From contig NC_086379.1 in assembly GCF_036588685.1 (NCBI RefSeq), forward strand, positions 58,652,001 to 58,716,000: a stretch of DNA of 64,000 nucleotides. Reading direction: 5' to 3'. Shown here piece by piece: positions 6,390 to 53,080 of this stretch (the first letter of the stretch is position 1; each line of letters starts with the position of its first letter). Below the pieces are notes generated by a model. It saw only the letters and a program-made list of their open reading frames with translations, was not told the origin of the DNA and did no database searches. The DNA is from Mytilus trossulus. Lineage: Eukaryota. A program made the position numbers and the translations under genes.

Positions 6390-7582
6390 GTTAAAGTCAC
6401 TGAAGGCGTTACCAATATGTTCCCTTCCTCAGTTGGAGTAAAACAAGGCTGCATTCTAAGTCCTACCTTATTTTCTTTTTATATAAATGATTTAACCTCA
6501 ATGTTTGATAACACATGTGATCCTGTAACATTACATGACATAAAATTGTCTAGTCTTTTATATGCTGATGACTTAGTATTAATTTCAGAATCCTCAGAAG
6601 GTTTACAAAATTGTCTAAACAAGTTAAATACTTATTGTGAAAAATGGAACTTGACTGTCAATCTTGACAAGACAAAAACAATGATATTTAATAAAAGTGG
6701 TAAAAAACTTACAAAAGACCAGTTTGTATTGAATAATGAATTAATTGAATGTTGCACAGAATATAAATATTTAGGTATACTATTCAAGCCATCAGGAATT
6801 TTCACTAATGCTGTAAATCTCCTATGTAAAAAAGCTTCTAAGGCATTGTTTTGTATTAAAAAAAATACTCTACTCAGATAAGATGGATGTTTCTTCCCAT
6901 ATGAAACTATTTAATTCTTGTGTTAGTCCAATATTACTGTATTGTAGTGAGATATGGTCGCTAAATATTGTGAAGAACAACAAAACTCTTGAATCTCAAT
7001 ATTTATCTATGGAATCAGTAAAACTCCAAATCAAATTTGCGAAAGGTCTTCTAAATGTTAATTCAAAGGCAGTAAATACAGCTGTATTAGCTGAATTGGG
7101 AATGTACCCTATTGGTATACAGGCCCTTAAGTCTTCTATAGGATTTTGGTTACATATTTTAAAGTCAAATGAAAATGAGTCTTTATTATATAATGTTTAT
7201 AAAGCTAACAAGCAGTTAAATGATGGATTTGCTTCAAAAGTTAAAATGCTACTTTCAAAATTAAATTTCACTCATGTTTGGGAAAATCAATGTACCTTCT
7301 CTAAAAAACGATTACTATTAGCCGTCGTGAAGAAGCTCAATGAAAATTACATTATATTTTGGAAAAATTGTCTCTTTAATGATGAAAATTCAATAAATGG
7401 AAATAAACTAAGAACCTACAGAAAATTTAAAGTTAAGTATGAACTAGAAAAGTACCTTTTATTGAATTTAGATAAAAATGTTACAAAAAATTATGCTAAA
7501 ATAAGAATAAGTAATAGTATGTTGGCTGTTGAACGTGGAAGATACAACAAAACAGCTCTAGAAAATAGAATATGTCCTTTAT
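6390..7582 (+). mobile_element. 5'-truncated LINE (RTE-X-like), 5' portion; reverse transcriptase and C-terminal region, interrupted at 7582
   Basis: GVKQGCILSPTLF and LLYADD RT motifs; YCSEIW; AVERGRY...RICPL. One frameshift in an A-run near 6860. The frame continues at 52554. Confidence 0.9.
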
Positions 7583-7678
7583 CAGTCCAGGCGATTATTT
7601 ATCCAAGTAATATAACGCATATCAGTAATATTACATGCAAAAATAATGTGGCTTATATTACAGTTATTTGTAATATAG
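7583..7678 (+). repeat. Left TIR plus subterminal GTAATATWAC boxes of the giant element
   Basis: CAGTCCAGGCGATTATT at 7583-7599; GTAATATAAC at 7607-7616; GTAATATTAC at 7625-7634; partial boxes at 7654 and 7670. Confidence 0.9.
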
Positions 7679-11653: not shown

Positions 11654-13100
11654 CTACTTGGATTTAACAGGCGTAGATGTGGTCATTCTTTTTTTTCTTC
11701 TTCCTTTTTGTGGAGTGTCTTCCATACGCCTCTTTCGGCCAATTATTTCACTTACATTCCCTTTACTATCTGGACCAAAGTAATATTCTACTTCGTTGTC
11801 TTCGGTCTTTCGTAGACAGTCTTTTCCTAGGAAGTTTGGTAATAAATCCATAGGGTTTCCAGCAGTAGACAGATACTCAATTTGCAGGTTGATTATATCT
11901 GCAATCCTTTCAATTGCTGACTCCGGTTGCAACCACAACTGTCCGCTCCTCAAAGACTTGCTGTATACGGGGTCAGTGTTCTGGTTTTGGTGTTTACTAA
12001 TCATAGTTGCTTTTCGCACATCATCAAAGGAATTCTCTCTGAATTCATGGTTTTTGGACAATATAACTTCTTCATAAACATCTTATAGGTTGGAGTATCA
12101 ATTTGGTAGATGTTTCTGTTACCCTTTTGAAGTAATTTTGTTCGGAAGAAATCATTATTAAGGAACAAATTAAGCATTTTCATAAAATTTAGGAATAAAA
12201 TCATTCCCACCCATGCAGAGTACAATACATATATGAATAGAAATTTTCTTTGCAATGTCAACATCTTCAAAATGGCTGTGAAAGAATTCTATTAAAGACA
12301 TTATATTGTAAACATCAATCTTTTTGTTTGGTTTCTGTAATACGACAAATACTGGGTGGCTATATTTCCCTTGTGCAAAGGGCCAGTTGTCTGAAAGTGC
12401 AAACATATGAATCGGAATGGCATCTATATCTCCTGATGTAACGATGCTACATGCTGCTTTTGACGGAGAAAGCTATGCTTTGCACATACACAACCAGTCA
12501 ACTTGAGACATTTCAGCTTCACCTTTTCTTTGGTGTATGTCATTTAGATCTTGTATAATTGGCTTAGGACACGTTTTCTTGAATGAACATTGTATTGGTA
12601 TAGTATAGTTCTGACATATGCATTCTACACTATGTTCACATGGAACAACCTTCATATTCAATTCACTGTCAATAAAATAAAATCAGCCCCTATTTCAAGT
12701 TGATTCGCATTAGCAGCCAAATAAGTACTCATGATGGTCTTTCCTTCTCTGGTAGTCACAATATCTTCTTTTCGAAATTGATTCTGGTTTATCATCTCAT
12801 GGGATGTTCTCAGATGAGCAATGGTTGCTTTTGTTTTTTTAAAGTTCTCTGTTGGTGTGTAGCTGCCTTGAAGGTATCTGGTGTAAAGGAATATTTTTCC
12901 TCACAAAGTATAAGTCTTTCTGCTGTTGGGAATTGTCGAAGGATTGGTTTTATAACTGCATTTTGAACATACTTTATATACTGTATGCCTGAGGTAACCT
13001 TCGTTTTAAATTTAACACCAGCATGTACATATATCCATTTATCTGGTTATTTCTGTACTTGAGTGGTTATCAAAAATTTACACGCTTAGCTTTTGTTTTA
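11654..13100 (-). pseudogene. Decayed XPG/FEN1 (PIN-like) 5' nuclease gene, AcademX-type
   Basis: Motifs in the expected order across frameshifts and stops: RLILCEEKY...K...R, KGEAEM (~12509-12526), SIVTSGDID (~12422-12448), VLCMGGNDF helix-turn-helix motif (~12197-12225); basic NLS-like C-terminus. Confidence 0.75.
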
Positions 13101-24569: not shown

Positions 24570-26631
24570 GTAGGATTCGGAATCGCGATGGTTGTCCGAA
24601 CCGCGATGGTTACGCTGTAGTGCAATGGTCAATCTGCGACGTTGAGTAAAAAGAAAAATGTACATGAGCTGTTAAAATGAAATCAAATTATTTAGATTTT
24701 ACAAAGCTGCTAGGCTCACGTTTGAAAAATCTTGTAACTTCTGTTCAAGTCATACCAAAGACTTTTTGAGATTTTGTTAATGTAAATTCAAATTTGTCAT
24801 TTTCCGATTAGCGCGCAGTAGTATAGAGTCAGATAAAGGGTGTTCAGAGGTGATTTTTTGTTATTAAGGTTGTATGTCTATACGATAACACTAAACAGGG
24901 TTCATATCAGTTTATCAAATGTTATGACAAACACAACAATTATTCCTATTTATTTTTTTACGAAGTACGCGTAGGGAGCAGTCAGGTTAATTTCGGACTA
25001 CTATGTTGCAGACAATTTACACTGTAACCGCAATACAATTATACTAGAGCGACGGTGTCTTTAGAAATCAGGATTTATCTCGATTTTAAACAACATTAAC
25101 ATTTTTTTTTTATTAAATTGTCAACATTTAATCACGAGAATCTTACTAAAAGATAAATCGGCGTTTTACGTTTCCGCAAATTGGCATTACTTTTCCGCGA
25201 AAAAAAGATGACGTTTCCGGAAAAAAAAGTTTACGTTTCCGCAAAAAAATATCTTTCTTTTCCGGAAAAAAAGTAACTATTCCGGAAAAAATAAATTATT
25301 ACTTTTCCGCAAATAATTAAGGAATACCTATTGATCGAAAGCAAAGCTATAATAAAAAATAAAATATGTATTAAGTTAAAGGTCATCATAACATGTAAGT
25401 AAAATACATCTATAAAATGTATGAACACGTATGTTCAAAAAGATCTTGATATGACAGTTAGTTCTGGCAGAATATTTGTAGCCAACACGTCGTAAAAAGT
25501 CCATATAAGCACATTCACCGTTTACAAATCTTGTATTTTGTTTAGGAAGGAAGGCCATCTTCACCTTTTCATATTTTCGAACGGGTGCTTTTACAGTTAG
25601 AGTTCTCATCTTTATGTAAGATGTTGTCTTCAGTTTCAATAACACATCGACAAAGACAAATATAGTAGGATGGCTCGCGTAAAACTGCTCCTTCAGGTAG
25701 GTACGAAAAGACTCGACACCATTCGGTGTTCTCTTTTCCTCGAGGTCAGGGGTGATGCCCAAATGGTTGGTGAAAATCTCAATTGCCATTTATATAAAAT
25801 TCCAATATATAATCGGCAGACCTCACGCATTTATCGTCAGATTGAGCATCGGCAATTGATCCAAAAAAGCATTCTTCAATCATGTCAGTTGGCAAGTAAG
25901 CCAAACCAAAGATTTCTCAATGAAGTTTAACTCATCGTTACCCGAGTCAGTAGTTATATCTAGTAAAGTGTAGCTATACTGAGATCAGAACATTTTCTTT
26001 ATTAGAAAGAAAAAATAAATAATTTTTATCATACATGTACATTCAAATGTTTTTAATTTACCAGGTAAATTTGCGGAAAAGTAATAAATACAAATTGCGG
26101 AAACGTATATTTCAAATTTGCGGAAACGTAGTATTGGGACTTTGAAAAATTAGCGGAAAAGCAATACGCCCAGATAAATTAACTTTAATCTTTAAAATTA
26201 TATCAGTATACTTTATTTCTGTTGTATTTATCGTGCAGTATTATTCTTAACATAGGATAGCCCATTTGCTGACAAAAATCATTATTCAGTCCCGTTGCTC
26301 CCCATATTTTACTGCCCGACATGGTTAAAAATATTTTTTTAACTCCCAAATGTAATGCTCAAAACTGTTAATATTGACTCGAATCGTTCCTTTCTTTCTT
26401 TTTCCTTTCATTTCCTGTGTGAGCATGAAACATGCACTCATCTACAAAACCCTATCCTCCTGTATGAAAATCAATGTTGTATTTGAAAGTTATATTCGAA
26501 AAAGTCACAATGTTGGAACGTCTTGCAATACCATTGCACTTCAGCGAAAGGACCATCACACGTCAGCGTGTCCATTGCACTTCAGCGTGACCATCGCACT
26601 CCAGCGTCCCCATCGCACCTCCGAGTCCTAC
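24570..26631. mobile_element. Non-autonomous TIR element in TA context, hosting a nested MULE
   Basis: gtaggattcgga / tccgagtcctac termini with repeated gcgatgg / ccatcgc subterminal motifs, flanked by (TA)n. Confidence 0.7.
25159..26171 (-). mobile_element. Deleted Mutator-like (MULE) element with transposase C-terminal remnant
   Basis: TSD agataaat at 25151-25158 and 26172-26179; inverted acgtttccgcaaa arrays; ORF 25376-25789 has RTPNGVESF...FYASHPTIFVFVDVL, typical of the MULE catalytic-E region. Confidence 0.8.
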
Positions 26632-30510: not shown

Positions 30511-32210
30511 GTCGTGTACAAGTTGCGATTTTGTACAGGTTATAACATGTACAAAAATATTGTACATGTTATAACTTGTATAATGCAAAAATACAAGTTA
30601 TAACATGTACAAAAGTACCTCATACATGTTATAACCTGTACAAAATATTGCTTAAAAATGGTTTTAACTTGTACACAATTTAAGATAAATCTTAATGAAG
30701 TAAAATATACATTTAAATTCACCAATGCTATAAAGAACAACAATAAATAGGCCAGAGCGTGTCTTTTTCTGTAGATGACAATGATCATAAAGTTTAAGAA
30801 ATATGTTTCATGACTTACAAAATGTATGTTGGCAAAATGTGTTTTCATGTGATTGTATGTTTTATGCATTCCATCTTTACTTAAATAAGTGTGACACTAT
30901 TTACTAAAAGCTTGCATTTCCTCAATGACAATTACATTCGATACTAGTAGCTAAACTCTTCCAAAAAATTTAAGAACAATGGCTTATAATTTTGGGTAAT
31001 ACTCCTCCCTTTCGTTTTATAGCATGCAAAGACTAAAACAATGTCTTTATATGCTTACTCTGTAAAAGCAAGAGAGAGCTGAAATAGTTTTCATCTGACC
31101 ACCCTTCATTATCAATATCTTTGGATCTACTCTTCAGCATTTTTGGCCTTCAGCATGACTTATGTAAATTTATAACTAATTATTTTTTAGAAACTATAAG
31201 ATCAATGCATGAGGTGAATGTCATTTTGATGTTTTAAATATAAATCTTCTACTATGAAAGCATGTATTTGTGGCCTTTGGATGTTGTCTGATCCATGGAC
31301 GGTTGACCGTTATGGGATAACCGTTTCACAAATGATATCGGATATGTTCCTTACGTCGGAACTCCAATCCCCGTCCCTTTCATAAATGTGACCTACCGAA
31401 TGAAACTATTTACCGGATTTGTTATCACATAAGCAACACAACGGACGCCTAATCATGTGGAGCAGGATCTGCTTACCCTTCCGGAGCACCTGCGGTCACC
31501 CCTAGTTTTTGGTGGGGTTCGTGTTGTTTATTCTTTAGTTTTCTATATTGTGTCATGTGTGCTATTGTTTGTCTGTCTGTCTCTTACATTTTTAGCCATG
31601 GCGTTGTCAGTTTATTTTCGATTTATGAGTTTGACTGTCCCTTTGATATCTTTCGTCCCTCTTTGTTGCCTTTAGGACACATACCGCATTTCCATTCCCA
31701 ATTTTATTTGTAGACACATCTATCCTGGCTATCCTCTTATGTCTTTTAGTGTCAACTAGAATGAAAGTAGTTTACTATTGCCTTCAAAGTGGACACTCAC
31801 AATTATAATTCATCAAATAAAGATATGTCCATAAATAGTCATAAGAGGATCATAAGACATGTCCTTAAGAAATATCTTATGACAGGCCTTAGGAATGCAT
31901 CGTAATACTGACCCCTGGACATTAACTGTATCATAAAAGGACAAAACACACTAACATGAAGGAATAATTAAAAAAGTTATGAAAATATTATTGAGGTTAA
32001 TAACATCTGTTGCGATAATAGAACCATATCCTTATATTTCGATTTTGTACAAGTTAAAACCATTTTTAAGCAATATTTTGTACAGGTTATAACATGAACG
32101 AGGTACTTTTGTACATGTTATAACTTGTATTTTTGCATTATACAAGTTATAACATGTACAATATTTTTGTACATGTAATAACCTGTACAAAATCGCAACT
32201 TGTACACGAC
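30511..32210. mobile_element. Non-autonomous DNA transposon with ~170-bp TIRs inserted in (TA)n
   Basis: gtcgtgtacaagttgcgattttgtacagg... at 30511-30680 mirrored at 32040-32210. Confidence 0.88.
31457..31662 (+). repeat. Interspersed repeat family C (gtggagcaggatctgcttacccttccggagcacctg...)
   Basis: Second copy at ~44576-44780; 3' fragment at ~235-290. Confidence 0.8.
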
Positions 32211-34944: not shown

Positions 34945-37900
34945 ATGGCAATGGAAAGACAAGAATTTGATCGTCAAAGGTAAGTTTTTAAGTTCCTGAC
35001 ACAGACCTTATGATATATTTTTTTTATACCTGAAAACCTTTAAAGTGAAATAAACTTGATACTAGTAAACAAAAGTATATATTCAAATAAATAAATAGAT
35101 AACTCAAGATGTATAAAATCCCCATTTTGATACCGCTATTTTGAGAAAAAAATCAATCTTCAAAATGAATTTGATGTGGCCTGAGTGCTGATTTCCAGAT
35201 TTTGTACTGAAAATAGTTTAAACTGTTAAACCCTGCATATCACAAAGACTGAAGAAATATGATACTACAGCTTTTATGGAGTTTTGAATTCGAAGTCCAA
35301 ACGCATTATCAACATGATCAATCTATCAAAACATGTAAAAATAATCTTTCATATGTTTATCTGTTGACATCCATGTTACGGAAATAATTATTATTTGGCA
35401 AAATGAGAGCAAATTTGATTTATTAAAAACAACATTATTTGAATAAACCCCATCTTGAAAGAATTGAAGAATATGTTTTCAAAATAGAGTCATAAAATAG
35501 CACTTATTATATAAATATATATCTTTAATCGAAAACTGTAATCAATCTATGAAGAAGAAATGCGCTGATAACATGCTGATTATTAAAATGGTGTAATTAT
35601 TGTTATCTGTGAAAAGAATAGTTACTGACACAATATAAATAGATAATGGAATTAAGTCAAAACACAAACAAATTAAATAAATTTTCAAAGAGTATAATTG
35701 TCTGTAAATTAACACTGTTAGACCGACGTATGTTATCTGTTCATGCATTTGGAAATTTTATTACAAATTCACGTGCCGTTGTAGTGACATGATTTATTAT
35801 ATATAAGTCATCAGAAGGTTAATCCAACATGGCATACATACACTTCATAAAGGTGGTTATAGTTTTTTTGTGTCCTAGTTGCAACACTAGTCTATTTTTA
35901 GAGTTCGAGTATAGGTAGATAGCAACAAAAATGAACTATAAACATATAAAAATGCATCAAATATTACAACCAATAGGGCTACACCATAGAACATTACCAA
36001 GGAAAAAATATTTATTGAGACAAGTTTAAGTATCGCATAAAATATATAAATATACAAGGACGAGGATGTGTCTTTAGAGGGCTTATGAATTGCCATAATC
36101 CTGAGACGGCTTCAATAAACAGGCTTTTATAGTACAATCTGCCATTTTTATAAAAACAGTTTAAAAAAGAATAACACTTTTAATTTCCTATTTTTAACGG
36201 AAAATACATATCAAACTTTATATATTAAATGAAAGTTGAAATACTACTTATAAAGATGTAAAAACACAATTGACTTCATTTTATCTTTGACTTCGGCATT
36301 ATCGGTTTGACGAATTATAATATCCGTTACTTAGAGTGCATTTCTTTCTAACACAAACGATGCAAACGGCTAAGCGCGCACATGTTTTGATTATTTGTTG
36401 ATCAAGTTTGACAAACTATGCACCCGCTTAACATCTACTACAGTTTGTCTTTCATCGTTTGTTTGTAAAAACGCTACCTTTGTTACTAACTTCAACCTTG
36501 AATTTCAGTAAGATTATAAGAGAACATCGGAACAATCTGCAAAAAGACAAACAATGCAATGAAATATTCGCCCTAGTGCCTATCATATCGTATAAACGTA
36601 ACACAAATATGACGTTTACAAAATTTAGGTTAGACAGAAATGCACTCTTAATCAGCATGAGATGACAGATTGACAGCTCCACTTTACCATGTTAACTATT
36701 TAATAATTGAGAAAAAATTTAAACTATTCACTTAAAACAGATTGAGATGAAGTACTATAAATCCTTAATCACAAACTATAAAACTTTAAATCATCATATA
36801 AATCTTAAAAATCCAATCGTGACAACGAAATATAAAATAAAATATCTAGAACAGGGACTTTCTTACGGAAACGCATTTGTGACATGCATAGACTTATGAA
36901 TAGACTTATTAAGAAGGGATATAATTACGATACTGTTGTCAAGTCATTAAATATTGCATATTTTTGCGTTAATATTGAGTCACGGATAAGGTCTTTGCGT
37001 CGGAACTAAACACATTTATTCTAAAAACAGTTGTTGGCATGACACGGGTTATGTTTTTCTCATATATGTTATGATGGTATGATACTAAACCCCTAACGGG
37101 AAGGATTGTGCCTGATGTTCATATGATGAAATCATAATCTTTCAGTCAGTTTAATTGAAGTCTGGAGCTTGCATGTCAGTTAATTGTTTAGGGGACAGCT
37201 GAAGGACGCTTCCTGGTGCGGGAATTTCTCGCTACATTGAAGACCTGTTGGTGACCTTCTGCTGTTGTTTTTTTTATTTGGTCGGGTTGTTGTCTCTTTG
37301 ACACATTCCCCTTTTCCATTCTCAATTTTAGTATAATGATAACGCAAGACAAACGATACAATATACAATACTAATAAAATAAAAAAACATGAAGAATAAT
37401 GTTGAACTATATCATAATGCCACTGGATCTTATTCCAGAATTGAAGTGGAGAAACACATCATATTGTTGAAAACCATTTGCAGAATATGCGGAACACGTG
37501 ACCTACACAGACCAACTTTTGACAAATGCGCTTTCACACCTGAAATAAAGGAAGTATTTGATGTAGACATCAAAGAAGATCAGAAGGAAATTCATCCCAC
37601 GGCTTTATGTCGTTCTCATGAAATGTTACTTTTGAAATGCAGGAAATTAAAAGCAGAAGGCCGCTTGAATGAATTTAAAACTCGGGTAAATCCTGTATGT
37701 TTTAAACCTCATAATGATGACTGCAAAATTTGTAATATCAAAAGAGGGAAAAAACGAAAAATAAACAATTTACAGCCGGAAGAAGACAAAAGAAAGAGGG
37801 TGATTCTGCCTAGTAATGAACACCGGGAAAGAGAATCAAGTCCAGAGGGTTTGACGGAATCAAATGCTTCTTCAGGGAACTCATTAGAATTTCCAAGAAC

Positions 37901-40900
37901 AATTAACACTAAAAATATGCTCGACATATTCAAAAAAATGTCGAAAACCGGACGGTCATCTTTCTTAGATCAACTTCTCCCTCTTTTAACACAAAATGAG
38001 ATTGCGTCTTTAGCAATAAACCTCGGATCAAAACAAGCAAAACTTCTAAAAGCAGACGCTGAACTTATGTCTCAAGATTCCCTGGAAAAGACCAAAATAA
38101 TAGATTTCAATCCAGATGAATGGCTTTCAAAGCGAAACAATGTATTGCTTAACTTCCTAAAAGGAATCACACTGTTCGATCCTAACAGATCGACCGAACC
38201 ACAGAAAATAACGCTATGTCGTGCTGTAGAACACGTTTATGGTTTAATATCGCAGAAATTGGTAGCACCACTTTCCTTTCTTTTGTCTCTGAATATATAT
38301 GCAAGAACGAGCAGCCGGTCTGTTATTGACTTAATCGCAAAATCATCGCCCAGTGGATGCTATAAAACATTACAGAAATGGATATCGAATGCAGGAAACG
38401 AAGTCCAGCCATGTCCACAAAGACCGTTAATGTTCGGTTTCGATAATGAACAAATTATAGGCTACAAGAGAGGTATAAGTGCGGAAAATCGCTCTAGGTC
38501 ATCTATCATAACCACTCAAGTACATGTTATAATGAAAAGTTCAGCTGATAATTTAGATATCCAATATTTAGAAAATCTAAAACCGAAAAATTATTTTTCA
38601 ATAAATCATTTTGAAGACAAAATTAAGCACGCAGAACGTTTCGATCTTCAAGAAAAGCAGCGAGTAGCTGAGGTTGAAAAACAAGAATTTAAAAAAATTG
38701 TGAGCAACATTCAAGACAACGATTCTGATTACTACCAAGAACTCGAATCGATTCACTTGGAACATCTTCAACACTACATTCAGACTGCCATTGATGCAGT
38801 TATTACAGATCGTATGACATCGCGATCATCAACAGACGATTTTGAGGATGAAATTGACAAACAGGATTTCCATGAAAGTAGGAAAAAGGATATCCTCATT
38901 TGCACTTTATGTGGGAGCGAAAATGCCAGGAAAAAATTAATATGTGAAGGATGCAAGAAAAAAAAAGGTATAAAGGAAGCAAGAAAAAATAGCAATTCGC
39001 AAACAACAGCAAAGCCTAAGAAAAAAGAAAAGCCTGTGTTGACAGAAGAGCTAAATTCTAATTCCACAGAGAGAAAAGAAAACACAGCAAATTATTCAAG
39101 ATTTTCATATGTATCCACCAACCATAAAGGGCCTACTGCAGTAAGCATGGGAATGCCTACATTTCAGAACCCAAATAGCAGTGAGTCTGTCGCAATGATA
39201 CTAAGACACATTGGAATGCAAGCTGGCATTAAGCGATACGGTAAAGATAATGATAGAGACTGGACTTTCGTCTGCTGTGACGGAAGACCACATAGTCTCT
39301 TCCAGAAGATATTGAATGAAGCTGTTATCTGTACACATTGCATTAATAACAAGGCGTGTTCAGATAAAGCCTCTTTTACATCAAAAGAAGAGTACACGCA
39401 ACACCACAAACGCCAACATTCCGATTTACAAAGTGCGTATCAAAAGGAATTCGACTGGCTTTATCTTAGAATAGGCGGGGGTCATTTTGAAATGAATGCT
39501 GTCAAGGCCTTTTTTGAGTTGAACTGGATACCATATCTTGAAAAGATGTGCGAGCTCATGGGATTTAACAGCCCAAATGCGAAGAACTTTGCTAAAACAT
39601 GTAAGGATCATCATGTAGCATGGCAACTTCTTCTTACATTTCACACTTCTGCTATGCGCGAAATGGTTGTACCATTTATTAAGCATATAGAAAAAAACCA
39701 AGGAGATTCCTCAGCAGCTAACTTTATATCTTTTTATAAAACAGTATTGTCTCATATTCCTAGACATCAATATTTACATTTACAAGTATGCAGATTTTCG
39801 CAGGCATTGATAAATTTACGTATGGGAATGAGGCGCAATAATGCCAAGCTAGTCGCTAGTGCAAAATTTCACTTAAAAGAATTGTTCTACGGTCGACATC
39901 ACCCACATTACCAGAGCATTGAACTTTTTGACACCGTTCAGTACAATACAATGCCAAATGTGGTGAAAACTATTTGGGATAACAACATATCTTTTACGGT
40001 GAGTGGAGACAGCTCAAAAGGACAAGATTTGGATTTTCTGCTAGAAGAAAAAAACAAAAATGTGAAACAATATCTGCCGTCAGGATCAATTCCGTCCGAC
40101 GAGACATGGAAGGCAATATGTTGCAATCTAAATTTTTTGAAAAATTAGAAAGTAAAGTTTCTATTCTCCTTGGGTTAAAAAATCCTACTGAATTTGGTAC
40201 GAAAGAACTTGACATTGATAACGCCATTAACAGTTTTAGACCTGTATTACGGAGGTACATTTCATCAAATGAGAAAAGCTTTGTCTCACTTAAAGGACTA
40301 GAACTACATCCAGATTTGTTACAATTTTTACCAATTTCTACTGGAAAACGTTTGCAAAAAATTAAATCGGAGATTTTATGCCAACCCATAGAGATTGTTA
40401 ACAATGAACCCGTATATGTTACAATAAATGAAGAAACCGATTATCAACACAAGCTTTCAAAGGAAAGATTAAGCATGAAAATACAGAAACTTATCGACCA
40501 ATTATCATCAGATGAACTTTTGCAGAGGCATTATCAAACTATTTTGGATTCCTTAAAAAGTCCCCTAATCAAACGTGATGTCTATGTAACACTTTATTTT
40601 GAATTGAAAGACGTGGTAAGCAGCACAACATCAGTGTTCGTGGAGTAGATGGGAACGAGAACTATGATTTCATATATTATACATCATACATGGCTAGGTA
40701 AAATAAGTACAATAATAGCTTAACTGTTAAAAAAACCCGTAGTTATGCTTATTGTGATGTTTGTGTGTATAACTTATTACAGAATTTACTAGAAAATTCT
40801 AGTGAATTTTGTTATAAGTTTAACACATAAACATATTTTTTCGTCAACAAAAACGGAAAATGTCTATTGGTGATATAAACAAGTGTTATTTCGATTTTGA

Positions 40901-43900
40901 AATTTATATATACACTGATGATTAAGGCCGAATAAAATATCATGTATTTCTAAAGTCACTAAAACTACAAATCAACATTAAAAGATAATACTTATTTATT
41001 TTTGTTTAACGATAGAAAAATTTGATATAAAGATAATTATCAACAAAATCAATTGCACATAAAACAATAGATATGTAAAATCATACGACGATTAGCGCGG
41101 TGAAATTATCAGTTTTCTCCTGGTAAATGTACTTTCTTTTTCAAATCCCAATTCAGACACAAACCTCAGTAGCTGTACCAACATTCAAAACACATGATCG
41201 TCCCTCTGCTCATTGTTATACATTAAAGTTTTTAAATGTTGTTTTTAATAACGTGAAAAGAGCTAAAGAGTAAAAAAGGATACATAGAATAAACGATCGC
41301 TCATCATTTTGCTCATAAAAAGTATATGTTATACGATTAAAAACTTAAGACTAACGAAAAAATGTAACGTTTTATAATTAAAAAAAAATAAATAATGTTC
41401 TATTTTTTCGATGACTATATATGTGCTATGGTCTTAATATGATTTTTTTAACATATAGCAAAAAACAAATCCATCTATACCACTGTACACGCTGTGGATA
41501 TAATTTTGTTTACACAATTCTAAAGAAATGTTATTGATTACAAGAATGTTCAATCTGACGAATAAAAACATGCGTTTAAAATAATTAACCTACTTTTTGA
41601 CATATATGTATAATCTTTATCAAACGATACTCACTTATATATATATACGATCTGTAGTAATTTATATATGCATGGTCTTTATTAATTATTTATAAAATCT
41701 TTTTGTATTTCTAAATTAGGTATGATTCAGAGAATGATCCTTCTGAGGATGAATTTAACATTGATGATGTTGAATCGTCTACTCCAAGAAAACCTAGAAA
41801 ACCCGGCGAAAGAAAAACTTATGATACGCTGCAGAAAAAGAAAACATCAGAAATATCCAATGAAAGAAGAAAAAAATCGACTGCTTTGCGTGGTATAAAA
41901 CAACAATTTAAAAGACTTAAAGAATTGAAACACCTAAATGTGACTTTTGCGTTCGTGTGCTTCGATTTGACACAACAACGTCAAACTATTAAGAGAGATG
42001 GGAAAGGAGCCTATTATGATAATTTGCTCAATGGTAGACCTATTGTGGATAAAAGGGACATACAAAGAAAAAAACAGAGGGATGGGTTGACGGAAACGTA
42101 TTTCCCTCATGAGGAAAATTTAAGAGAAACCCAGTTCATAACACCTACAAAGTTGTCGTGTGGTCCAGGAGTGTCCCGAAATATTGCCAGAGAGCAGATG
42201 GAGACACTGCAAGATGTAAACATTCAGCCAGGTCATGAGAATGACTCTTACTCACATGGTATGATTACTGTCATAGTATAACGTTATGCTGTTTATATTA
42301 CTACTCTAAATTATTGCTTTCATTTTTTTTAATACACGATCTATTTTTAGAAAGTGTTGCTTCATGGAATTGTGTTTAATCAGGTATTAATGAATTCCAT
42401 AAACATTTGATTTTAAGAAACGTATATACCTTCATTATCGTTTGCAAGAATTTTGCTTACTTCGCCATGTTCACATATTACAGACGGAAACCTTTCATTT
42501 GACAATTATTAAGATAAGAACTCAAAACAGTATAATCAATTGCAGGACGTCCGATGGTATTACATGTATTACATGACAAGCAAATATAGAGAATCAGTTA
42601 TTTTTGTATCTGCATATATAATATACCATATGACAACATGTACTAATATGGATGTATTGATTAACAATTTTATCTTAGATAAGCTGAAATAATCTGAATA
42701 TTTCCATTTTTTTTTTACTCATAGATGTAGCAACTCCACAAAGGAAGGTCACAAGAAAGAGAATTAGGACCGTAAAAAGTAAACGTACGAACATTATTGT
42801 TGCAGTAGCTGATGATGATAGTGACAATAATGATGTTGATGTGAATAACGATTCAGCTGTTGATGCTGTTGCTTTTGATGCTTCGAAAAATAATAATGAA
42901 AATGAAGATGGAGATATCGACGACGTTGACGACGGCGCCGATGATGACGACGACGATGAGGATGATGATGATGATGATAATAATAGCGATGAGGATGATG
43001 ATGATGATAATCATAGCGATGAAGATGATGATGATGATAATCATAGCGATGAGGATGATGATAATGATAGCGATGATGATGACAATAAGGATGACGACGG
43101 TGACGACGACGACACCAATGATGATGATGATGATTTAGCTGCTACTACTGATGATTTTAAATTTGACGACGACGATGACGACAGCACTGATAACGTGAAT
43201 TTACCACGACTTTACAGAGTAAGTTATCTTAATTTGAATTTTTGAAATACTAAGGCTTTTCTATCTCAGAAATATATGACCTTAGCTTTATTTGGGAAAA
43301 CTTTTAGGTATCTTGGTCCTTAAACTCGTACTTTATTTGGCCTTTCTGATTTTAAACCACCGAAGATAAATTCATAGTAGTAAAAATAATGTATAGTGGA
43401 AAAACTATTGCATATTATTATATTTTTTTTTCAATAACAAAACTATATTATAACAATACATTGAAATGATTTGATCTATTACAAAAATATCTTTTTCATA
43501 CATTTTTGGACATACTTCATATACACATGCATTCGATGCGGTGACCAATTTAAAGAATAAAAGTAAAGAGAACTGGAACAAGAAAACAATACGTCACTTC
43601 GTATTATGAACCTAAATAGTTTGCCAATACAAATTAAACAAACAAAATTAAGTTAATATAACAAGTCGTTTTTACCAGAAATTTCACAGACTTGAAAAGG
43701 CATATGCATGCTAGTGGTACCTACAAAACATAGACAAGAATTGAGCATACTTCTCCATTATTATTGCAGAATAACTTATCTAATGTGAAAAATACAGATC
43801 TATCGAAAAGAGGTAAGTCTTTTAATTACAATAAATGTGCGTCCCTGAGAGAGGTATCTGAATCATTTATCTAATTTTGTCTTAAGAGAAAAGGTATGGT

Positions 43901-46045
43901 AAAATATAAACGACTTAAACTATTACGTCGAAGAACAGACATAACTTATGTATGTGCCTGTCCCAAGTCAGGAGCCTGTAATTCAGTGGTTGTCGTTTGT
44001 TTATGTGTTCCATAGATATAGGAAGATGTGGTGTGAGTGCCAATGAGACAACTCTCCATCCAAATAACAATTTAAAAATTAAACCATTATAGGTTAAAGT
44101 ACGGCCTTCAACACGGAGCCTTGGCTCACACCGAACAACAAGCTATAAAGGGCCCCAAAATTACTAGTGTAAAACCATTCAAACGGGAAAACCAACGGTC
44201 CATACTTGTTTTTCGTTCATTTTTTTACTTAAATAAGGCCGTTAGTTTTCTCGTTTGAATTGTTTTACATTGTCTTATCGGGGCCTTTTATAGCTGACTA
44301 TATGCGTTTGGGCTTTGCTCATTGTTGAAGGCCGTACGGTGACCTATAATTGTTAATGTTTGTGTCATTTTTATCTTTTGTGGATAGTTGTCTCATTGGC
44401 AATCATACCACATCTTCTTTTTTTATATAACATCGGCATTCGAAAAAAAGACAAAAATGAAAATAAAATTAAAAAATTGAAGTTGTAGAAACCATTAATT
44501 CGTCATATTACGCACTATATAGTATACTCAAAACGTAGCTGCTCAAGAAGTACTTAGTTTGATTCTTCTTTGTGTGTGGAGCAGGATCTGTTTACTCTTC
44601 CGGGCCACCTGAGAACACCCTCAGTTTTTTGTGGGGTTCGTGTTGCTTAGTCTTTAGATTTCTATGTTTTGTCGTTTGTACTATTTTTTAGCTGTTTGTC
44701 TATTTCTTTGTTAGCTATGGCGTTGTCAGTTTATTTTCGATTGATGACTTTGACTGTCTCTCTTGTATCTTTCGTGCCTCTAATGTACATTTCTTAATTG
44801 TATTTTATAGCTAATGATGACAAAATGTATTTTACTGATATATGTTCGACCAAGTACGATATAATTGATTAAATCATTCATGCCTCTGACAGTTGAATAT
44901 ATGCCATTTGTTAAAATAAAATTAACGGTCCGAATTTTCTTGCAACAGATGCGCATTTGGACAATACATGTCTCTTCAGTGATGATCGTGGTCAAAATAT
45001 TTGAAATCCAAAGCTTATATAAAAGATGAAGAACTATAATCCAAAAGGTCCAAAAGGTATAGCCCAATCCGTGAAAGGAATCGGAGCTTTGCATGAGGGA
45101 GATACATTCCTTAATTTATAACAATTTCTAATATTTTGTTACAGCAAATTTTAATAACACAAAAAATCTGTTCATGCCAGTACTGAAGTACTGGCTACTG
45201 GGCTGTTGATACCCTCGGGGACTAATAGTCCACAAGCAGAGGCATCGACCCAGTGGTAGTAATAAAATTAACGGTACCAATTTTCTTTAAAATGTTTCTA
45301 TATTAATTGTCATACTTGAAAGAAAAAAAATCTAAAGATTTTTTTTATTTATATCCCAACAGAAAAACTGAAAAAATTATTCAACGAAAGAGCCAAAAAA
45401 ACAGAGCTGAATGATGCCGAATCTGATCATAGTCACGATAAAGACGGTAGCACCTCTACAGAAGGTAATTATTTCTCATACTTAACAATTCGATCATAAA
45501 AAATGTAGTTCGTATGGTTAAAATAGGATATGTATTGAAAGCTCACTAAAGATGTCTGTAAAGCATATGTGAACTTTCTTAGTTGTAGGGGAAATCATAA
45601 GTTATATTCGTCAATTTTTCTTTGCTAAACACTTGAATATGCACATTACGATGACGAAACTTTGGAAACTTCAACTTATTCATTCATTCACCATGTTCAC
45701 TAGCAATTGTATTTCGGTGAATCCACTTTTCAAATTTCTGAATATAATATGAATATCTGAAAAAACTGCTTTAGGAAAATGTAAATTCATTTTCTCATTC
45801 GAAATTGATTACTTTCATTCGCTGTACGCGCCTCCAATATTGTATTGATCAAGAATATTTTTGAAAGAAACTACTTTGAAAACTTTATCATGAAGTTTAA
45901 TTAAAAAAAATATTTTTGCCGTTTTTCAGAAAATACCTGTCGGTTTTGGACATATGTGGACGACGAAGATCTTGAGGCACGAAATGCTTTCCAGCCTAAA
46001 ACTGGGAAAAGATGTAGAAAGAAGACAACGGTATTAGACATTTAA
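34945..46045 (+). CDS. Six-exon gene for a 442-aa basic/Asp-rich, probably nuclear protein of unknown function (exons 34945-34979, 41720-42258, 42725-43218, 43770-43812, 45363-45464, 45930-46045)
   Basis: All five introns are GT-AG with matching phases (2,1,0,1,1); joined CDS is 1329 nt, open, and ends in TAA; AATAAA at ~46279. Confidence 0.8.
37389..40648 (+). CDS. Transposase-like protein (~1086 aa if the frameshift at ~40135 is corrected): RAG1-N-terminal/Chapaev-like Zn domain plus Academ/DUF6589-like DDE core
   Basis: N-terminus LKTICRICG...EVFDVDIKEDQKEIHPTALC...FKPHNDDCKIC; candidate catalytic motifs FGFDNEQ, VCCDGRP, GGGHFEMN, HPHY, DFLLEEKN; extra C4 and C2H2 Zn motifs. ORFs 37389-40148 and 40106-40648 overlap at a T6 run. 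Confidence 0.85.
42915..43185 (+). repeat. Coding (GAT/GAC)n trinucleotide-rich tract with 27-bp higher-order units (poly-Asp)
   Basis: Repeated agcgatgaRgatgatgatgatgataat units inside exon 3 of the six-exon gene. Confidence 0.9.
44917..45287. repeat. Interspersed repeat bounded by direct repeats (aaaattaacggtMcVaattttct)
   Basis: The same ~22-bp motif occurs at ~44918 and ~45264; intronic. Confidence 0.55.
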
Positions 46046-47729
46046 ATTCATGAATTCAATTTAGGTGACACCAATTGAGTGGTATCATTAAATACAATTT
46101 GAAACTCTAGAATGCTTTTGTAGTTGTTTTATAGTATTTATTTTGTATATTTGTTCAATATAAGTAAAGTCGCAAACTTCATAAAAAAATTTAAAGTAAT
46201 TATTTATTTTATCTTTATTTAAAAGAACGTGTTTTATAAGTTATTTTGTGAATCTGATAGTTGATATAAGCTTAAAACAATAAAGACAACGGCACCTGTT
46301 TAGTTTATTCACCAACAACATTACAATGTGGATGTAGTTAATTATAATATCAATTACAGTACCAAATGTATAAATGACAAGCTGTCCTAGCAAGTTATGT
46401 AATAAAAATAAACTCAAGCATTAACAATTTAGTGGTAACAAGGTCATTATTGTTTACAAATTGTAAATTTCGGTTAATGGTTATTATTGCTGTGAATAAC
46501 TTGAAACATGCGTATCCGTTTACAGTTTTTTATATGATTTCTAATGACTCTTAAAAGATTTTAAATACGCATCAATAACAAAATTGTTAAGTTTTAATTT
46601 TAAGATATCGACAAAGTATTTCAGTCCTTGTGGTTTCTTATTAAAAATCAAGCTTCATTCAACAATAACTTTCGTATTTTTGTTAGGACAATTAGCTACT
46701 TGCATATATTAATGGAACTTAAATAAAAATCAATATTGAATTTTTAAGTTCGTACGAATTAATTGTAAAAACGGGATTATATAAAAGATTTTAATAAAAA
46801 AAAAAGGAAAAAAAGGAGAAAATGAATAAAAAAAAATCATTAAATGCAACAAACAGCACAATGAGCGACAGCAAGTTTTTACTGTCATGTTTATACTTTA
46901 ACCAGTCAATTAAACTTAGTTTATCTAGTAATTGAATTGAATATAAAGAAGAAAATTATTATATATATCTATTACTTTTGATTTATTCATTTGCCTCAAA
47001 AAATTATCTTATTTCTTACCTTAGATGTGTATTTGTATTATTTTGTGTAAATATTATTATCCTTTGCAATATGTACAAGACACATTAATCATAATTTGTA
47101 CAAAATATAATATACATATGTGAAGTTGTTTTTTTGTTTTGTTATTTGTTTATTTGTCACATTTAAATTTAAGAAAGATCTTTCCATAAGTATTTTTGAT
47201 GCATTGTTAATAATTGTTATGCCATGTTAGACTGAATGTGCTGATTGATTTGAAATAAAGTATATTATATTTCATTATAAACAACATAGAAATTATCAAA
47301 TATTTTGCATCCAAGTATGAATTATTTTAATCAGCATATATCATATAATTAAACAATATATTTACACATTGTGTTTGATCAGTATATTACACACTTTGAT
47401 GGGGTTAAATACCATTAAATAAATCATTTCATTACCAGTATTTTTTTCAGCTATTTTCTATACATCCGCAGTTGTTTTTATTCTTATAATGGTATGACGT
47501 AATTGTAATCGTCGTCGTTGTCCCACGATAATAGTAAATAGTTTCTAATTAACAACTTGACTTTGAGAGTATTTATAAATCTCCATGAAGTTGATCCACA
47601 AGGTTCCATTCTTAAAAAAAGGAAAGTTGTAATTGATTCGAGGGTTCATGTGTCAGCTACTGAGGATAAAAGAGCACACGTACAATTCCACCTGGCAGAC
47701 CAATTATATCATAGTGTGGTTTCAAACGG

Positions 47730-47888
47730 TGTAGGCTGATTTTGAACAAATGGTATAAGAAAGTAATCTACGTAATGACCAACAAGTTCAGGTTTGGTGT
47801 AGGCTGATTTTGAACAAATGTGAAACCTGAACTTGTTGGTCATTACGTAGATTACTTTCTTATACCATTTGTTCAAAATCAGCCTACA
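47730..47888. repeat. Perfect 66-bp inverted duplication with a 27-bp spacer, in Penelope-like RT sequence
   Basis: Arms at 47730-47795 and 47823-47888; an arm encodes ELVGHYVDYFLIPFVQNQPT, resembling Penelope RT. Confidence 0.85.
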
Positions 47889-47914
47889 GTGGAGATCATT
47901 TTTAACATCTCATT

Positions 47915-48284
47915 AGAACTGTCAGAATAATCTGTCATAGAACTGTCTTAAACTGTGATAGAACAGTTATATACATAGAACAGTTCTACCTTAGAACTGT
48001 TCTAAGTAGAACTATCAGAATCAGAACTAGGTAACCTGATAAAATCAGCTCTAGGTAGAACTCTGAGGATCAGTTATATGGTAGAACTGTCAGTATCAGT
48101 TTTAGGGTAAAACTGTCTAAAACTATTCTTGTTAGAACTGTCTAAATCAGTTCTAGATAGAACTGACCAAATATATTCTAGGTAAATACTGTCTAGGTGT
48201 CAGGATCACAGATCTACAAACTGACATAGAACAGTTCTTCTGACAGATTCTGTTTGATGAGAGGTTAGAAGTTATCTTCACTGT

Positions 48285-48285
<1 letters not shown>
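47915..48285. repeat. Degenerate short-motif array (tagaactgtY)
   Basis: Many agaactgt / acagttct copies in both orientations. Confidence 0.65.
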
Positions 48286-48320
<35 letters not shown>

Positions 48321-48323
<3 letters not shown>

Positions 48324-52399: not shown

Positions 52400-52548
52400 T
52401 AGCAAAACTATATTACATCTTTTCGTAATATTGATTATTACGTCTTTTTGTAATATAGACGTTATATTACATAAAGCTGTAATATTACTTTATTATGTTA
52501 TATTATAGGTTTAAGTAATATTACTCTTTACAATAATCGCCTGGACTG
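52400..52548 (-). repeat. Right TIR plus subterminal GTAATATWAC array of the giant element
   Basis: AATAATCGCCTGGACTG at 52532-52548; boxes at 52515-52524, 52497-52506, 52479-52488 and 52461-52470 (18-bp period). Confidence 0.9.
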
Positions 52549-53080
52549 TTTATGCCATAAAGAGTTGGAAGATGAATTTCATTTCATCATTACATGTTCA
52601 GAAATTAATAAAACTAGGATCAAAATGTTTAATGAAATTTCTAATATTGTCCCCTGTTTTAATTCCATGAGTGAAGAAAATAAATTTGATTTTATATTTT
52701 CCTGCGAAGAATGTGATATTTTACTTATCATTGTTAACTACATAAGTGAAATGTATAATGAGAGAAACAATTATAATGTCAATATATGAACTGTGTAATG
52801 TATATTATAACATATTTTTTGATACATGAGCATAATATTTTAATACATAACTTTAAAGAGGAGGCATGCTGTCAAAACTAGTATTATAATTAATACTATT
52901 GATCTATGTTTTTGTTTTTCTTTCAATGCTACATGTTTGTAGTGTAACTGTTTATTGACTATCGTTTTGTAATTTTAATATGCCTGTTTGTTTGTTGTTT
53001 TTGTTGTGTATTTTAGTAACAATCCTATTGTTTGGATTTCAAACTAATAAAATTCTTATTCTTATTCTTATTCTTATTCT
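52549..53080 (+). mobile_element. 3' portion of the interrupted RTE-X-like LINE
   Basis: CHKELEDEFHFIITC... to stop at 52789; 3' UTR; AATAAA at 53046 followed by a (TTCTTA)n tail. Confidence 0.9.

What the first reader, a model, noticed from the sequence alone, without database searches (positions are those of the whole stretch)
34945..46045. Hidden six-exon cargo gene whose first intron contains the whole transposase ORF on the same strand
Seen: six exons splice with consistent phases into a 442-aa open frame (MAMERQEFDRQR-YDSENDPSEDEF...ERRKKSTALRGIKQQFKRLKELKHLNVTFAFVCFD...poly-Asp...KTGKRCRKKTTVLDI*). A TATA box lies upstream. The ORF track shows only pieces of it. The 3.3-kb intronless transposase lies in the 6.7-kb intron 1. 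Inference: one promoter could yield either the accessory protein (intron 1 spliced) or the transposase (intron retention, alternative acceptor or intronic polyadenylation), a possible splicing switch controlling mobility. The frame stays intact despite repeat insertions in its introns, which suggests selection.
Basis: partly seen in the sequence, partly recalled or inferred. Interest (0 to 1): 0.8.

Follow-up and report, generated by a model that had tools for sequence, protein, structure and literature searches.

The report
Transposon partner gene behind the transposase
The predicted gene is real and is the conserved second gene of a giant mussel DNA transposon, but in this copy it starts just after the transposase gene rather than wrapping around it; a sister transposon family in the same genome does have the wrapped, splice-switched layout.

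Summary
Spliced RNA contigs from 4 of 4 runs follow them, and RefSeq proteins of Mytilus trossulus match them (P0041, P0043, P0040).

Exon 1 (34945-34979) is not supported. The only upstream partner seen for acceptor 41720 is a donor at 40697, 49 nt behind the transposase stop. It lies on a contig collinear with the transposase ORF. An in-frame ATG at 40690 gives MAR-YDSEN..., which is the RefSeq N-terminus. In this family the partner therefore lies in tandem behind the transposase (433 aa here).

It is not cargo. Diverged homologues sit 1.2-3.0 kb downstream of 16 of 28 transposase loci.

The unit lies in a 44,966-bp element with 17-bp TIRs and a 5-bp TSD. Its transposase has a RAG1-NZD/Chapa domain, which places it as Chapaev-like in the CMC(T) group.

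RefSeq gene LOC134691272 has one start exon and isoforms encoding either the transposase or the partner. The transposase exon lies inside the partner's 16-kb intron 1. This is the maize En/Spm layout.

The parts
7583..7599 (+). Left terminal inverted repeat (17 bp, begins CAG...) of the 44,966-bp element. The TSD copy TTTAT lies at 7578-7582.
   Evidence: Perfect 17-bp inverted match to 52532-52548. The copies on C8, C6 and C10 share this edge. Empty sites in two other LINE copies read ...CCTTTAT|GCCATAAAG.
52532..52548 (-). Right terminal inverted repeat. The TSD copy TTTAT lies at 52549-52553.
7607..7634 (.). Left subterminal 10-bp palindromic boxes (GTAATATTAC type), 18 bp apart. The right-end boxes are at 52461, 52479 and 52515.
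   Evidence: 5 of the 10 window matches (1 mismatch allowed) lie within 90 nt of the two ends. The same boxes lie upstream of the sister family's start exon (L030, L031).
34945..34979 (+). It is an unsupported candidate and its use is unknown.
   Evidence: Sequence. No contig and no RefSeq protein links it to exon 2.
37389..40648 (+). Transposase gene with a Chapa / RAG1-NZD-like N-terminal domain. In this copy it is split into ORFs 37389-40148 and 40106-40648 by a missing T in the run 40133-40138. The stop TAG is at 40646-40648.
   Evidence: PF12560, E 3e-11; PDB 21wb, E 3.5e-4; 7 T in C8, C6a, C6b; C6a intact at 1086 aa; +T in 4 of 4 runs.
40690..40697 (+). First coding piece of the partner gene (ATG GCT AG|), 41 nt behind the transposase stop. 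The 5' limit of this exon is unknown, because contigs run on upstream through the transposase ORF.
   Evidence: X2 record 6; X1 records 1 and 4. RefSeq proteins P0041, P0043 and P0040 start MARYDSEN. The piece is identical in 4 genomic copies.
40698..41719 (+). Intron (1,022 nt, GT..AG) between the start piece and exon 2. It is partly retained in some contigs.
   Evidence: the spliced form in X2; the unspliced pieces X1 records 2 and 3, X2 records 7 and 8.
41720..42258 (+). Partner exon 2. It holds the conserved ~130-aa domain (SNERRxKS...TPSKLSCGPGVS).
42725..43218 (+). Partner exon 3, basic then poly-Asp. The length varies between copies (33 nt, 11 codons).
   Evidence: (124 against 157 nt at 42927-43083).
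43770..43812 (+). Partner exon 4 (43 nt).
   Evidence: The contig letters between the ex3 and ex6 pieces number 143, plus 2 ambiguous, which equals 43+102. See also P0041.
45363..45464 (+). Partner exon 5 (102 nt).
   Evidence: X2 record 6, piece 45361-45462.
45930..46045 (+). Coding part of partner exon 6, with stop TAA at 46043-46045. The RNA contigs run on about 0.9 kb past 46049.

Best explanation
The gene is the second, accessory gene of a giant TIR DNA transposon (7583-52548) of the CMC(T)/Chapaev kind.

In this family the two genes lie in tandem on one strand. The transposase ORF ends at 40648. The partner's start codon is at 40690. A donor at 40697 is spliced to exon 2 at 41720, and exons 3-6 follow, giving a 433-aa protein in this copy.

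Shown:
- The exon 2-6 structure.
- The 40697->41720 joint.
- An RNA contig that carries at least 1.7 kb of transposase ORF followed by the spliced partner exons. This is two ORFs in tandem, as in the maize Spm tnpD transcript.
- The conserved linkage of partner and transposase.

Inferred:
- The partner is translated from a shorter RNA with the same joint, whose 5' end has not been mapped.
- The partner acts as a TnpA-like helper, for example by binding the 10-bp subterminal palindromes or by recruiting the transposase.

The tandem layout looks like a derived form of the nested layout annotated in the sister family. There, one start exon next to the left subterminal boxes is spliced either to the transposase exon or, skipping it, to partner exon 2.
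For: -: the joints and contig pieces in 4 runs from 3 studies.
- RefSeq M. trossulus proteins P0041 (423 aa, two accessions), P0043 (on a contig of C7's length, 100% to window 41718-42098) and P0040 all start MAR and follow exons 2-6.
- exon-2 homologues (27-34% identity, intact 169-185-aa frames) lie 1.2-3.0 kb downstream, on the same strand, of 16 of 28 transposase loci. For loci at 49% identity or more the count is 14 of 16.
- only 12 relatives among 1.84 billion representatives. All the named ones I looked up are from Mytilus or Pinctada.
- the Pinctada relative carries a C-terminal THAP DNA-binding domain.
- TIRs, TSD and empty sites.
- the Chapa/NZD domain.
- isoforms X1 (transposase) and X2/X3 (partner) of LOC134691272 share one start exon.
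- Passages of PMC2613891 and PMC1636069: Spm tnpD mRNA carries the two ORFs in tandem, and tnpA skips the ORF that lies in intron 1.
Against: - Contigs are graph paths, so a contig across two genes does not prove a single transcript.
- The direct 40697->41720 joint is seen in 1 of 4 runs (X2). It is inferred from contig ends in X1 and is not informative in X5 and X6.
- Translation of a second ORF behind a 1086-codon ORF is unlikely, so a shorter RNA must exist, and none was seen as such.
- RefSeq models are computed predictions and I could not see their evidence.
- The expressed copies differ from the window copy (for example +T after 40132 and 40162 T>A), so this copy's own expression is not shown.
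- The partner's function is untested. It has no Pfam, PDB or PHROG relative, and the structure prediction tool was off.
Confidence: 0.72

Rival explanations
1. A first exon at 34945-34979 is spliced to 41720, at least in some tissue, so that the whole transposase ORF is intron 1 and one promoter serves both products.
For: - The donor is a 9-of-9 consensus, with a TATA-like box and a Kozak-like ATG, and its phase fits exon 2.
- The sister family is annotated with exactly this layout.
- By eye, its start exon begins ME..E, as does the second Met of this exon. This is weak.
- En/Spm and SmTRC1 work this way (passages of PMC2613891 and PMC1636069).
Against: - No contig shows the joint in 4 runs. 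X1's exon-2 contig begins at 41717 (TAG), as expected for two upstream branches only.
- Three RefSeq models start MAR, not MAMERQ.
- Phase fit alone occurs in 2 of 10 strong donors.
- The depth of exons 2-6 is only about 1-1.7 times that of the transposase part. This is a weak argument, because depth is a per-contig mean.
- Contigs drop rare forms, so absence is not shown.
Confidence: 0.12
2. There are two separate genes. The partner has its own promoter inside the 3' end of the transposase ORF, and the long contig is only an assembly path through two overlapping transcripts. No long bicistronic RNA matters.
For: - RefSeq annotates the partner as its own gene with a MAR start.
- Contigs cannot show starts.
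- In the 52% family, exon 2 lies about 2.1 kb from the transposase stop.
Against: - In two families a donor sits right behind the transposase stop (49 nt here, about 10 nt in the C7:46.37 Mb family). This is expected if the transposase exon itself is spliced on.
- M. galloprovincialis models P0044 and P0045 fuse the two genes.
- The sister family has one gene for both products.
Confidence: 0.2
3. The gene is captured host cargo, with no role in the element's life.
For: - The acidic, low-complexity exon 3 looks like many host proteins.
- RefSeq gives it host-like names such as 'protein PFC0760c-like' and 'starmaker-like'.
Against: - Linkage to the transposase is kept across lineages with only 37-52% transposase identity.
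- No relatives were found outside Mytilus and Pinctada among 1.84 billion representatives.
- Exon 2 is under constraint.
Confidence: 0.04

Closest known systems
Maize En/Spm (CACTA) tnpA/tnpD transcription unit
   Same: - Both belong to the same broad group (CMC/CMCT).
- Both encode two proteins on one strand: a transposase and a non-homologous accessory protein.
- Both have a long RNA with the two ORFs in tandem.
- Both have subterminal repeat boxes.
- In the sister mussel family, a start exon at the element's 5' end is spliced either to the transposase ORF or past it. (En/Spm facts come from passages of PMC2613891 and PMC1636069.)
   Different: - In the window's family the short, ORF-skipping RNA was not seen, and the partner's ATG lies behind the transposase stop.
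- The transposase has a Chapa/RAG1-NZD domain and no Pfam Transposase_21 match.
- The TSD is 5 bp.
- The element is 45 kb long.
- The partner has no similarity to TnpA that any tool reported.
SmTRC1, a CACTA-type element of Schistosoma mansoni
   Same: It is an animal element with several spliced transcripts, including a clone with two ORFs in tandem and shorter RNAs that lack the transposase domain (passages of PMC1636069).
   Different: SmTRC1 carries Transposase_21 and this element does not. Its accessory proteins are unrelated. No shared start exon is described in the passages I read.
Chapaev / Chapaev3 transposons and the Aplysia N-RAG-TP element
   Same: All have the N-terminal Chapa zinc domain related to the RAG1 NZD (passages of PMC4411706, bioRxiv 10.64898/2026.01.24.700457 and PMC8355894). 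N-RAG-TP, like this element, is from a mollusc.
   Different: - No second gene is described for them in the passages I read.
- My searches found no paper on a partner gene: 'Chapaev'+'Mytilus' gave 0 papers, 'Chapaev'+'second ORF' gave 1 unrelated paper, and 'Chapaev'+'bivalve' gave 4 unrelated papers.
- Repbase reports are not in the library.
RAG1/RAG2 and ProtoRAG
   Same: A transposase with the NZD-type domain that works with a second element-encoded protein; 5-bp TSD (passage of PMC8355894).
   Different: - The profile of this transposase matches only RAG1 residues 136-250, not the RAG1 core.
- The partner is not RAG2-like in any search.
- The genes here are in tandem on one strand.

Membership tests
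CMC(T) group (EnSpm-Mirage-Chapaev-Transib), Chapaev-like | N-terminal Chapa (RAG1 NZD-like) zinc domain | tested here: met
   PF12560 at E 3.2e-11 over aa 53-147. PDB 21wb at E 3.5e-4. The family profile against RAG1 residues 136-250 gave E 3.3e-7. 3 of 4 paralogues match PF12560.
CMC(T) group (EnSpm-Mirage-Chapaev-Transib), Chapaev-like | [quoted passage not shown] | tested here: inconclusive
   C648-x2-C651 and H673-x3-H677 are invariant in 4 paralogues and lie between invariant D631 and E701. The choice of catalytic D/D/E is by eye, and no structure or reference alignment was available.
CMC(T) group (EnSpm-Mirage-Chapaev-Transib), Chapaev-like | Termini 5'-CA..TG-3' and TSD of 2-5 bp (PMC12730594, passages) | tested here: met
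   The termini are CAGTCC...GGACTG and the TSD is TTTAT. Two empty LINE sites confirm 5 bp.
EnSpm/CACTA proper | Transposase_21 (PF02992) domain; CACTA termini; 3-bp TSD | tested here: not met
   No PF02992 match at E up to 1 in 4 paralogues. The termini are CAGTC and the TSD is 5 bp. That CACTA elements have a 3-bp TSD is recalled.
En/Spm-type two-product unit | Long RNA with the transposase ORF and the accessory ORF in tandem | tested here: met
   X2 record 6 (3939 nt) holds transposase ORF, then the 40697|41720 joint, then exons 2-6. It is a contig, so a single molecule is not proven.
En/Spm-type two-product unit | Short RNA from a shared first exon that skips the transposase ORF as intron 1 | tested here: not met
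   In the window family it was not seen in 4 runs, and the RefSeq start is MAR. In the sister family it is annotated as LOC134691272 X1 against X2/X3, mapped. Contigs show presence, not absence.
En/Spm-type two-product unit | Accessory protein binds the subterminal repeats and is needed for transposition | not testable with these tools
   The only hints are the boxes at both ends and the THAP fusion in the Pinctada relative.
Transib / RAG1 core | Sequence similarity of the catalytic core to RAG1/Transib | tested here: not met
   The profile of 4 paralogues against all PDB chains matched RAG1 only at residues 136-250. A fold comparison could not be run.
Captured host gene (cargo) | Relatives are ordinary host genes not linked to the element | tested here: not met
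   16 of 28 transposase loci have the partner downstream. Only 12 relatives were found in the large library, from Mytilus and Pinctada.

The most novel reading that the evidence does not exclude
Mussel Chapaev-like giant transposons run an En/Spm-style splicing switch. One start exon beside the left subterminal boxes gives either the RAG1-NZD-domain transposase or, by skipping about 16 kb, a partner with a previously undescribed ~130-aa domain. The window's family is a derived state in which the partner acquired its own ATG 41 nt behind the transposase stop. The partner would be the factor that reads the 10-bp palindromic end boxes.
Probability: 0.35. Interest if true: 0.7.

Novelty: new variant of a known kind. 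Interest (0 to 1): 0.5.

Why it matters
The transposase carries the zinc domain that RAG1 also has, and RAG1 works only together with a second protein. Here a relative of that domain's carrier is tied to a conserved partner gene, in two layouts within one genome: nested with a shared start exon, and tandem. This gives a natural system for asking how animal cut-and-paste elements balance transposase against helper. It also lets one ask whether the En/Spm solution is ancestral to the CMC group or was reached twice. Practically, RefSeq names such as 'PFC0760c-like', 'starmaker-like' and 'COMMD4' for these proteins are misleading, because they are transposon genes.

Tried and rejected
- Pfam, NCBIfam (first try failed), PHROGs and PDB sequence and profile searches gave nothing for the partner domain.
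- A word search with exon 2 found only an unspliced genomic ORF, because of the length limits.
- I looked for an exon-1 homologue in the compact family (C7:46.37 Mb), in the 52% family and in the 37% family by tblastn and donor scans. Nothing was convincing. The 35-nt candidate I noted in L008, L009 and L011 was superseded by the RefSeq start exon, which lies 10 kb further upstream.
- There is no homologue of that start exon within 1.4 kb of the window element's left end.
- The Tudor-like last exon of the sister families is absent from the window family.
- Eight of 8 ORFs of 95 aa or more in 7583-34900 had no Pfam match, so the XPG-like note was not verified.
- The selection test among copies has little power, because the copies are 98% alike.
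- One search ('Academ' matched 'academic') and paper search 102 (min_terms too low) were useless.
- I did not search with a joined spliced model. Exons were searched one by one, and full-length proteins came only from the tools.
- Supplementary files were not opened. Additional file 5 of PMC4411706 and Table S1 of the 2026 preprint might help type the Chapa domain.


Full report
WHAT IS THERE

The window is G000:C7:58652001-58716000, from a 1.3-Gb genome with 32% GC. Five contig lengths (C6, C7, C8, C10, C11) equal the contig lengths recorded for Mytilus trossulus RefSeq proteins. I therefore take the genome to be M. trossulus. This is an inference.

They sum to 1329 nt, which is 442 codons plus a stop. 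I checked this by phase arithmetic and by translating each exon separately. I did not build or search a joined model.

THE SETTING

The locus lies inside a very large repeat. Four to six copies on C6, C8 and C10 are 96-99% identical to window ~7583-52550.
- The edges are a perfect 17-bp inverted repeat (7583-7599 and 52532-52548), flanked by TTTAT on both sides.
- The element sits inside a LINE reverse-transcriptase ORF. Two other copies of that LINE read straight through with a single TTTAT.
- It is therefore a 44,966-bp TIR transposon with a 5-bp TSD.
- Ten-bp palindromic boxes (GTAATATTAC) lie 18 bp apart near both ends.

THE TRANSPOSASE
- Its only Pfam match is the RAG1 N-terminal region (PF12560, E 3e-11).
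- It matches the solved RAG1 NZD (21wb, E 3.5e-4).
- A profile of four paralogues matches RAG1 only at residues 136-250.
- The literature calls this the Chapa domain of Chapaev transposases, which belong to the CMC group (passages of PMC4411706 and bioRxiv 10.64898/2026.01.24.700457).
- The group's other marks are CA..TG termini, a TSD of 2-5 bp, and C(2)C plus H(3-4)H motifs (passages of PMC12730594). These are present, but my assignment of the catalytic residues is by eye.
- The window copy is frameshifted. It has 6 T at 40133-40138 where three other copies have 7. C6a has an intact 1086-aa ORF.

RNA EVIDENCE

One search found 20 runs that hold the stretch. I laid four of them (X1, X2, X5, X6; 3 studies, 2 coded organisms; Logan contigs) on 40050-46049.
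- The joint 42257/8->42724/5 is in 4 of 4 runs.
- Contig pieces follow ex2-ex3-ex6. Between the ex3 and ex6 pieces there are 143 contig letters plus 2 ambiguous, which equals exon 4 plus exon 5 (43+102). X2 also lists exon 5 as a piece.
- The contigs run about 0.9 kb past 46049.
- The splicing shows that these contigs are RNA.
- Upstream of exon 2, X2 record 6 (3939 nt) joins 40694|41717 and continues collinear to 40050 and 1,097 nt beyond. Because TAG is shared on both sides, the cut is 40697|41720, with GT at 40698-99 and AG at 41718-19.
- X1 record 1 ends at 40700 and record 4 begins at 41717. These are the break points expected in a word graph when this spliced form and the unspliced form (record 2, 40671-41286) coexist. 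A third form ending ...AAG would move the break to 41718.
- X5 and X6 say nothing about this site.
- The joint table printed only 15 of 57 joints.
- All four runs carry the extra T after 40132, so the expressed copies are not the window copy.

THE START CODON

ATG 40690 (ATG GCT AG|G TAT GAT...) is in frame with exon 2 and lies 41 nt behind the transposase stop.

RefSeq proteins of M. trossulus agree with it:
- P0041 (XP_063443363.1 and XP_063443364.1, 423 aa, on a contig of C6's length) reads MAR followed by exons 2-6.
- P0043 (XP_063447025.1, on a contig of C7's length) is 100% identical to window 41718-42098 and starts MAR.
- P0040 (on a contig of C8's length) starts MAR.

These are computed models, and I could not see what evidence they rest on.

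However, 2 of 10 strong donors there have an in-phase ATG-open segment, and the donor that is really used scores only 6 of 9. I found nothing that links 34979 to 41720. Contigs can miss rare forms, and I could not lay reads on 34.9 kb.

NOT CARGO
- The exon-2 peptide has diverged homologues (34, 32 and 27% identity; open frames of 169-185 aa). They lie downstream of, and on the same strand as, diverged transposase homologues.
- 16 of 28 transposase loci with E <= 1e-100 have one 1.2-3.0 kb behind the main match. For loci at 49% identity or more the count is 14 of 16. The misses may be losses or may fall below detection.
- The exhaustive HMMER search found only 12 relatives among 1.84 billion representatives. 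The named ones I looked up are from Mytilus edulis, M. galloprovincialis, M. californianus and Pinctada imbricata.
- The conserved ~130-aa domain has no Pfam, PDB or PHROG relative.
- The Pinctada protein ends in a THAP domain (E 2.5e-13).
- Sister families end in a WYPG-type exon. UniRef titles one such protein 'Tudor domain-containing', and Pfam found nothing in it. That exon is absent from the window family.
- Among four copies, exon 2 has 4 synonymous and 0 non-synonymous variable codons. The acidic exon 3 has 4 synonymous and 7 non-synonymous. Exons 2, 4, 5, 6 and the start piece vary at 4 of 852 columns, against 61 of 3853 in introns (p 0.009).

In the 52% family the transposase frame has no ATG before the CRICG motif. 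It has an acceptor (tttccag|T) in the same phase as partner exon 2.

RefSeq partner P0024/P0030 begins METPEQPNMELENTSST. A 33-nt degenerate pattern for its first 11 codons hits the genome 6 times with 1 mismatch each, and 0 times in the reversed control.
- Five of the six hits lie 9.5-11.8 kb upstream of a 52%-family transposase on the same strand.
- The sixth (C8:65101758) is on the opposite strand to its neighbouring transposase.

The exon ends ...ACT GA|GTAAGT, and the palindromic boxes lie within about 300 nt upstream of its ATG.

RefSeq gene LOC134691272 (on a contig of C11's length) has three isoforms:
- X1 is P0053 (1108 aa), which reads MELENTSST-D-EAVLARHLKILETSCRICG... and is the transposase.
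- X2 is P0030 (469 aa), the partner.
- X3 is P0032 (446 aa), the partner.

Mapping confirms this:
- P0030 aa 1-18 match C11:49610572-49610625 at 100%.
- P0053 aa 5-1108 match C11:49621142-49624453 at 99.5%.
- Partner exon 2 is at C11:49626524.

So one start exon serves both proteins, and the transposase exon lies inside the partner's ~16-kb intron 1.

This is the En/Spm design. In En/Spm the short tnpA RNA skips the ORF in intron 1, and the long tnpD RNA holds both ORFs in tandem. SmTRC1 of Schistosoma is similar (passages of PMC2613891 and PMC1636069).

HOW IT MOST LIKELY WORKS

In the window family the two genes are in tandem. At least some RNA carries both, like tnpD. I infer, but have not shown, that the partner (433 aa here) is translated from a shorter RNA with the same 40697->41720 joint.

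Its role as a TnpA-like end-binding or recruiting factor is also an inference. It rests on three things: the conserved linkage, the boxes at the ends, and the THAP fusion in a relative.

Two M. galloprovincialis models (P0044, P0045) instead fuse the transposase to the partner through a predicted intron. They use the partner frame that is open from 40603. My contigs do not show that intron.

NOVELTY AND LIMITS
- The protein is already in RefSeq under uninformative names.
- The two-product layout is known from En/Spm and SmTRC1.
- I found no paper on a partner gene of Chapaev-like elements or on these mussel elements. Repbase reports are not in the library.

Noticed in passing
window 7583-52548: The whole finding lies in a 44,966-bp TIR transposon with a 5-bp TSD (TTTAT), inserted into a LINE RT ORF. 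At least 4 near-identical copies lie on C6, C8 and C10. The C8 copy is about 33 kb because it lacks nested repeats, for example window 25159-26172, 30511-32210 and 44015-44200.
   Followed up: partly
window 40133-40138: The window copy has a T-run of 6 where three other genomic copies and all 4 RNA runs have 7, so this copy's transposase is frameshifted (919 aa plus a 180-aa frame). The C8 copy has a stop at codon 1016. C10 has a deletion of window 40161-48321 that removes the partner gene, and RefSeq model P0027 there runs on into a trypsin-like exon.
   Followed up: yes
window 40255-40610 and 40603-40697: M. galloprovincialis models P0044 and P0045 (1312 and 1408 aa) fuse the transposase to the partner in frame through a predicted intron. 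The partner frame is open from 40603, overlapping the transposase's last codons. The 4 runs' contigs do not show this intron.
   Followed up: partly
L030:88-387 (C8:74200687-74200986), L031: The sister family's start exon lies within about 300 nt of repeated GTAATATTAC-type boxes like those at the window element's ends, so its promoter seems to sit in the subterminal repeats, as in En/Spm.
   Followed up: partly
window 42927-43083: The poly-Asp part of exon 3 differs by 33 nt (11 codons) between the window and other copies or the RNA contigs. It is the least constrained exon (4 synonymous, 7 non-synonymous variable codons).
   Followed up: partly
window 11654-13100 (- strand): Another first-stage note calls this an XPG/FEN1-like nuclease gene. 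The 135-aa ORF and 7 other ORFs of 95 aa or more in 7583-34900 gave no Pfam match. The short exons were not tested.
   Followed up: partly
window 43850-45450: Intron 4 holds very highly expressed or highly repeated short elements (contig word depth 10^3-10^5 in all 4 runs), one of them (44015-44200) specific to this copy.
   Followed up: no
G000:C8:50065683-50066219: A further 99% copy of partner exon 2 has no transposase match listed nearby. It may be a deletion derivative.
   Followed up: no
proteins P0025, P0050, P0051: M. coruscus records named 'COMMD4' are fusions of these transposon proteins with a COMM-domain gene. The name is misleading for the transposon part.
   Followed up: no
G000:C8:65101758-65101790: One of the six copies of the sister family's start exon lies on the strand opposite to its neighbouring transposase (C8:65095636-65098890, - strand), which suggests a rearranged copy.
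   Followed up: no
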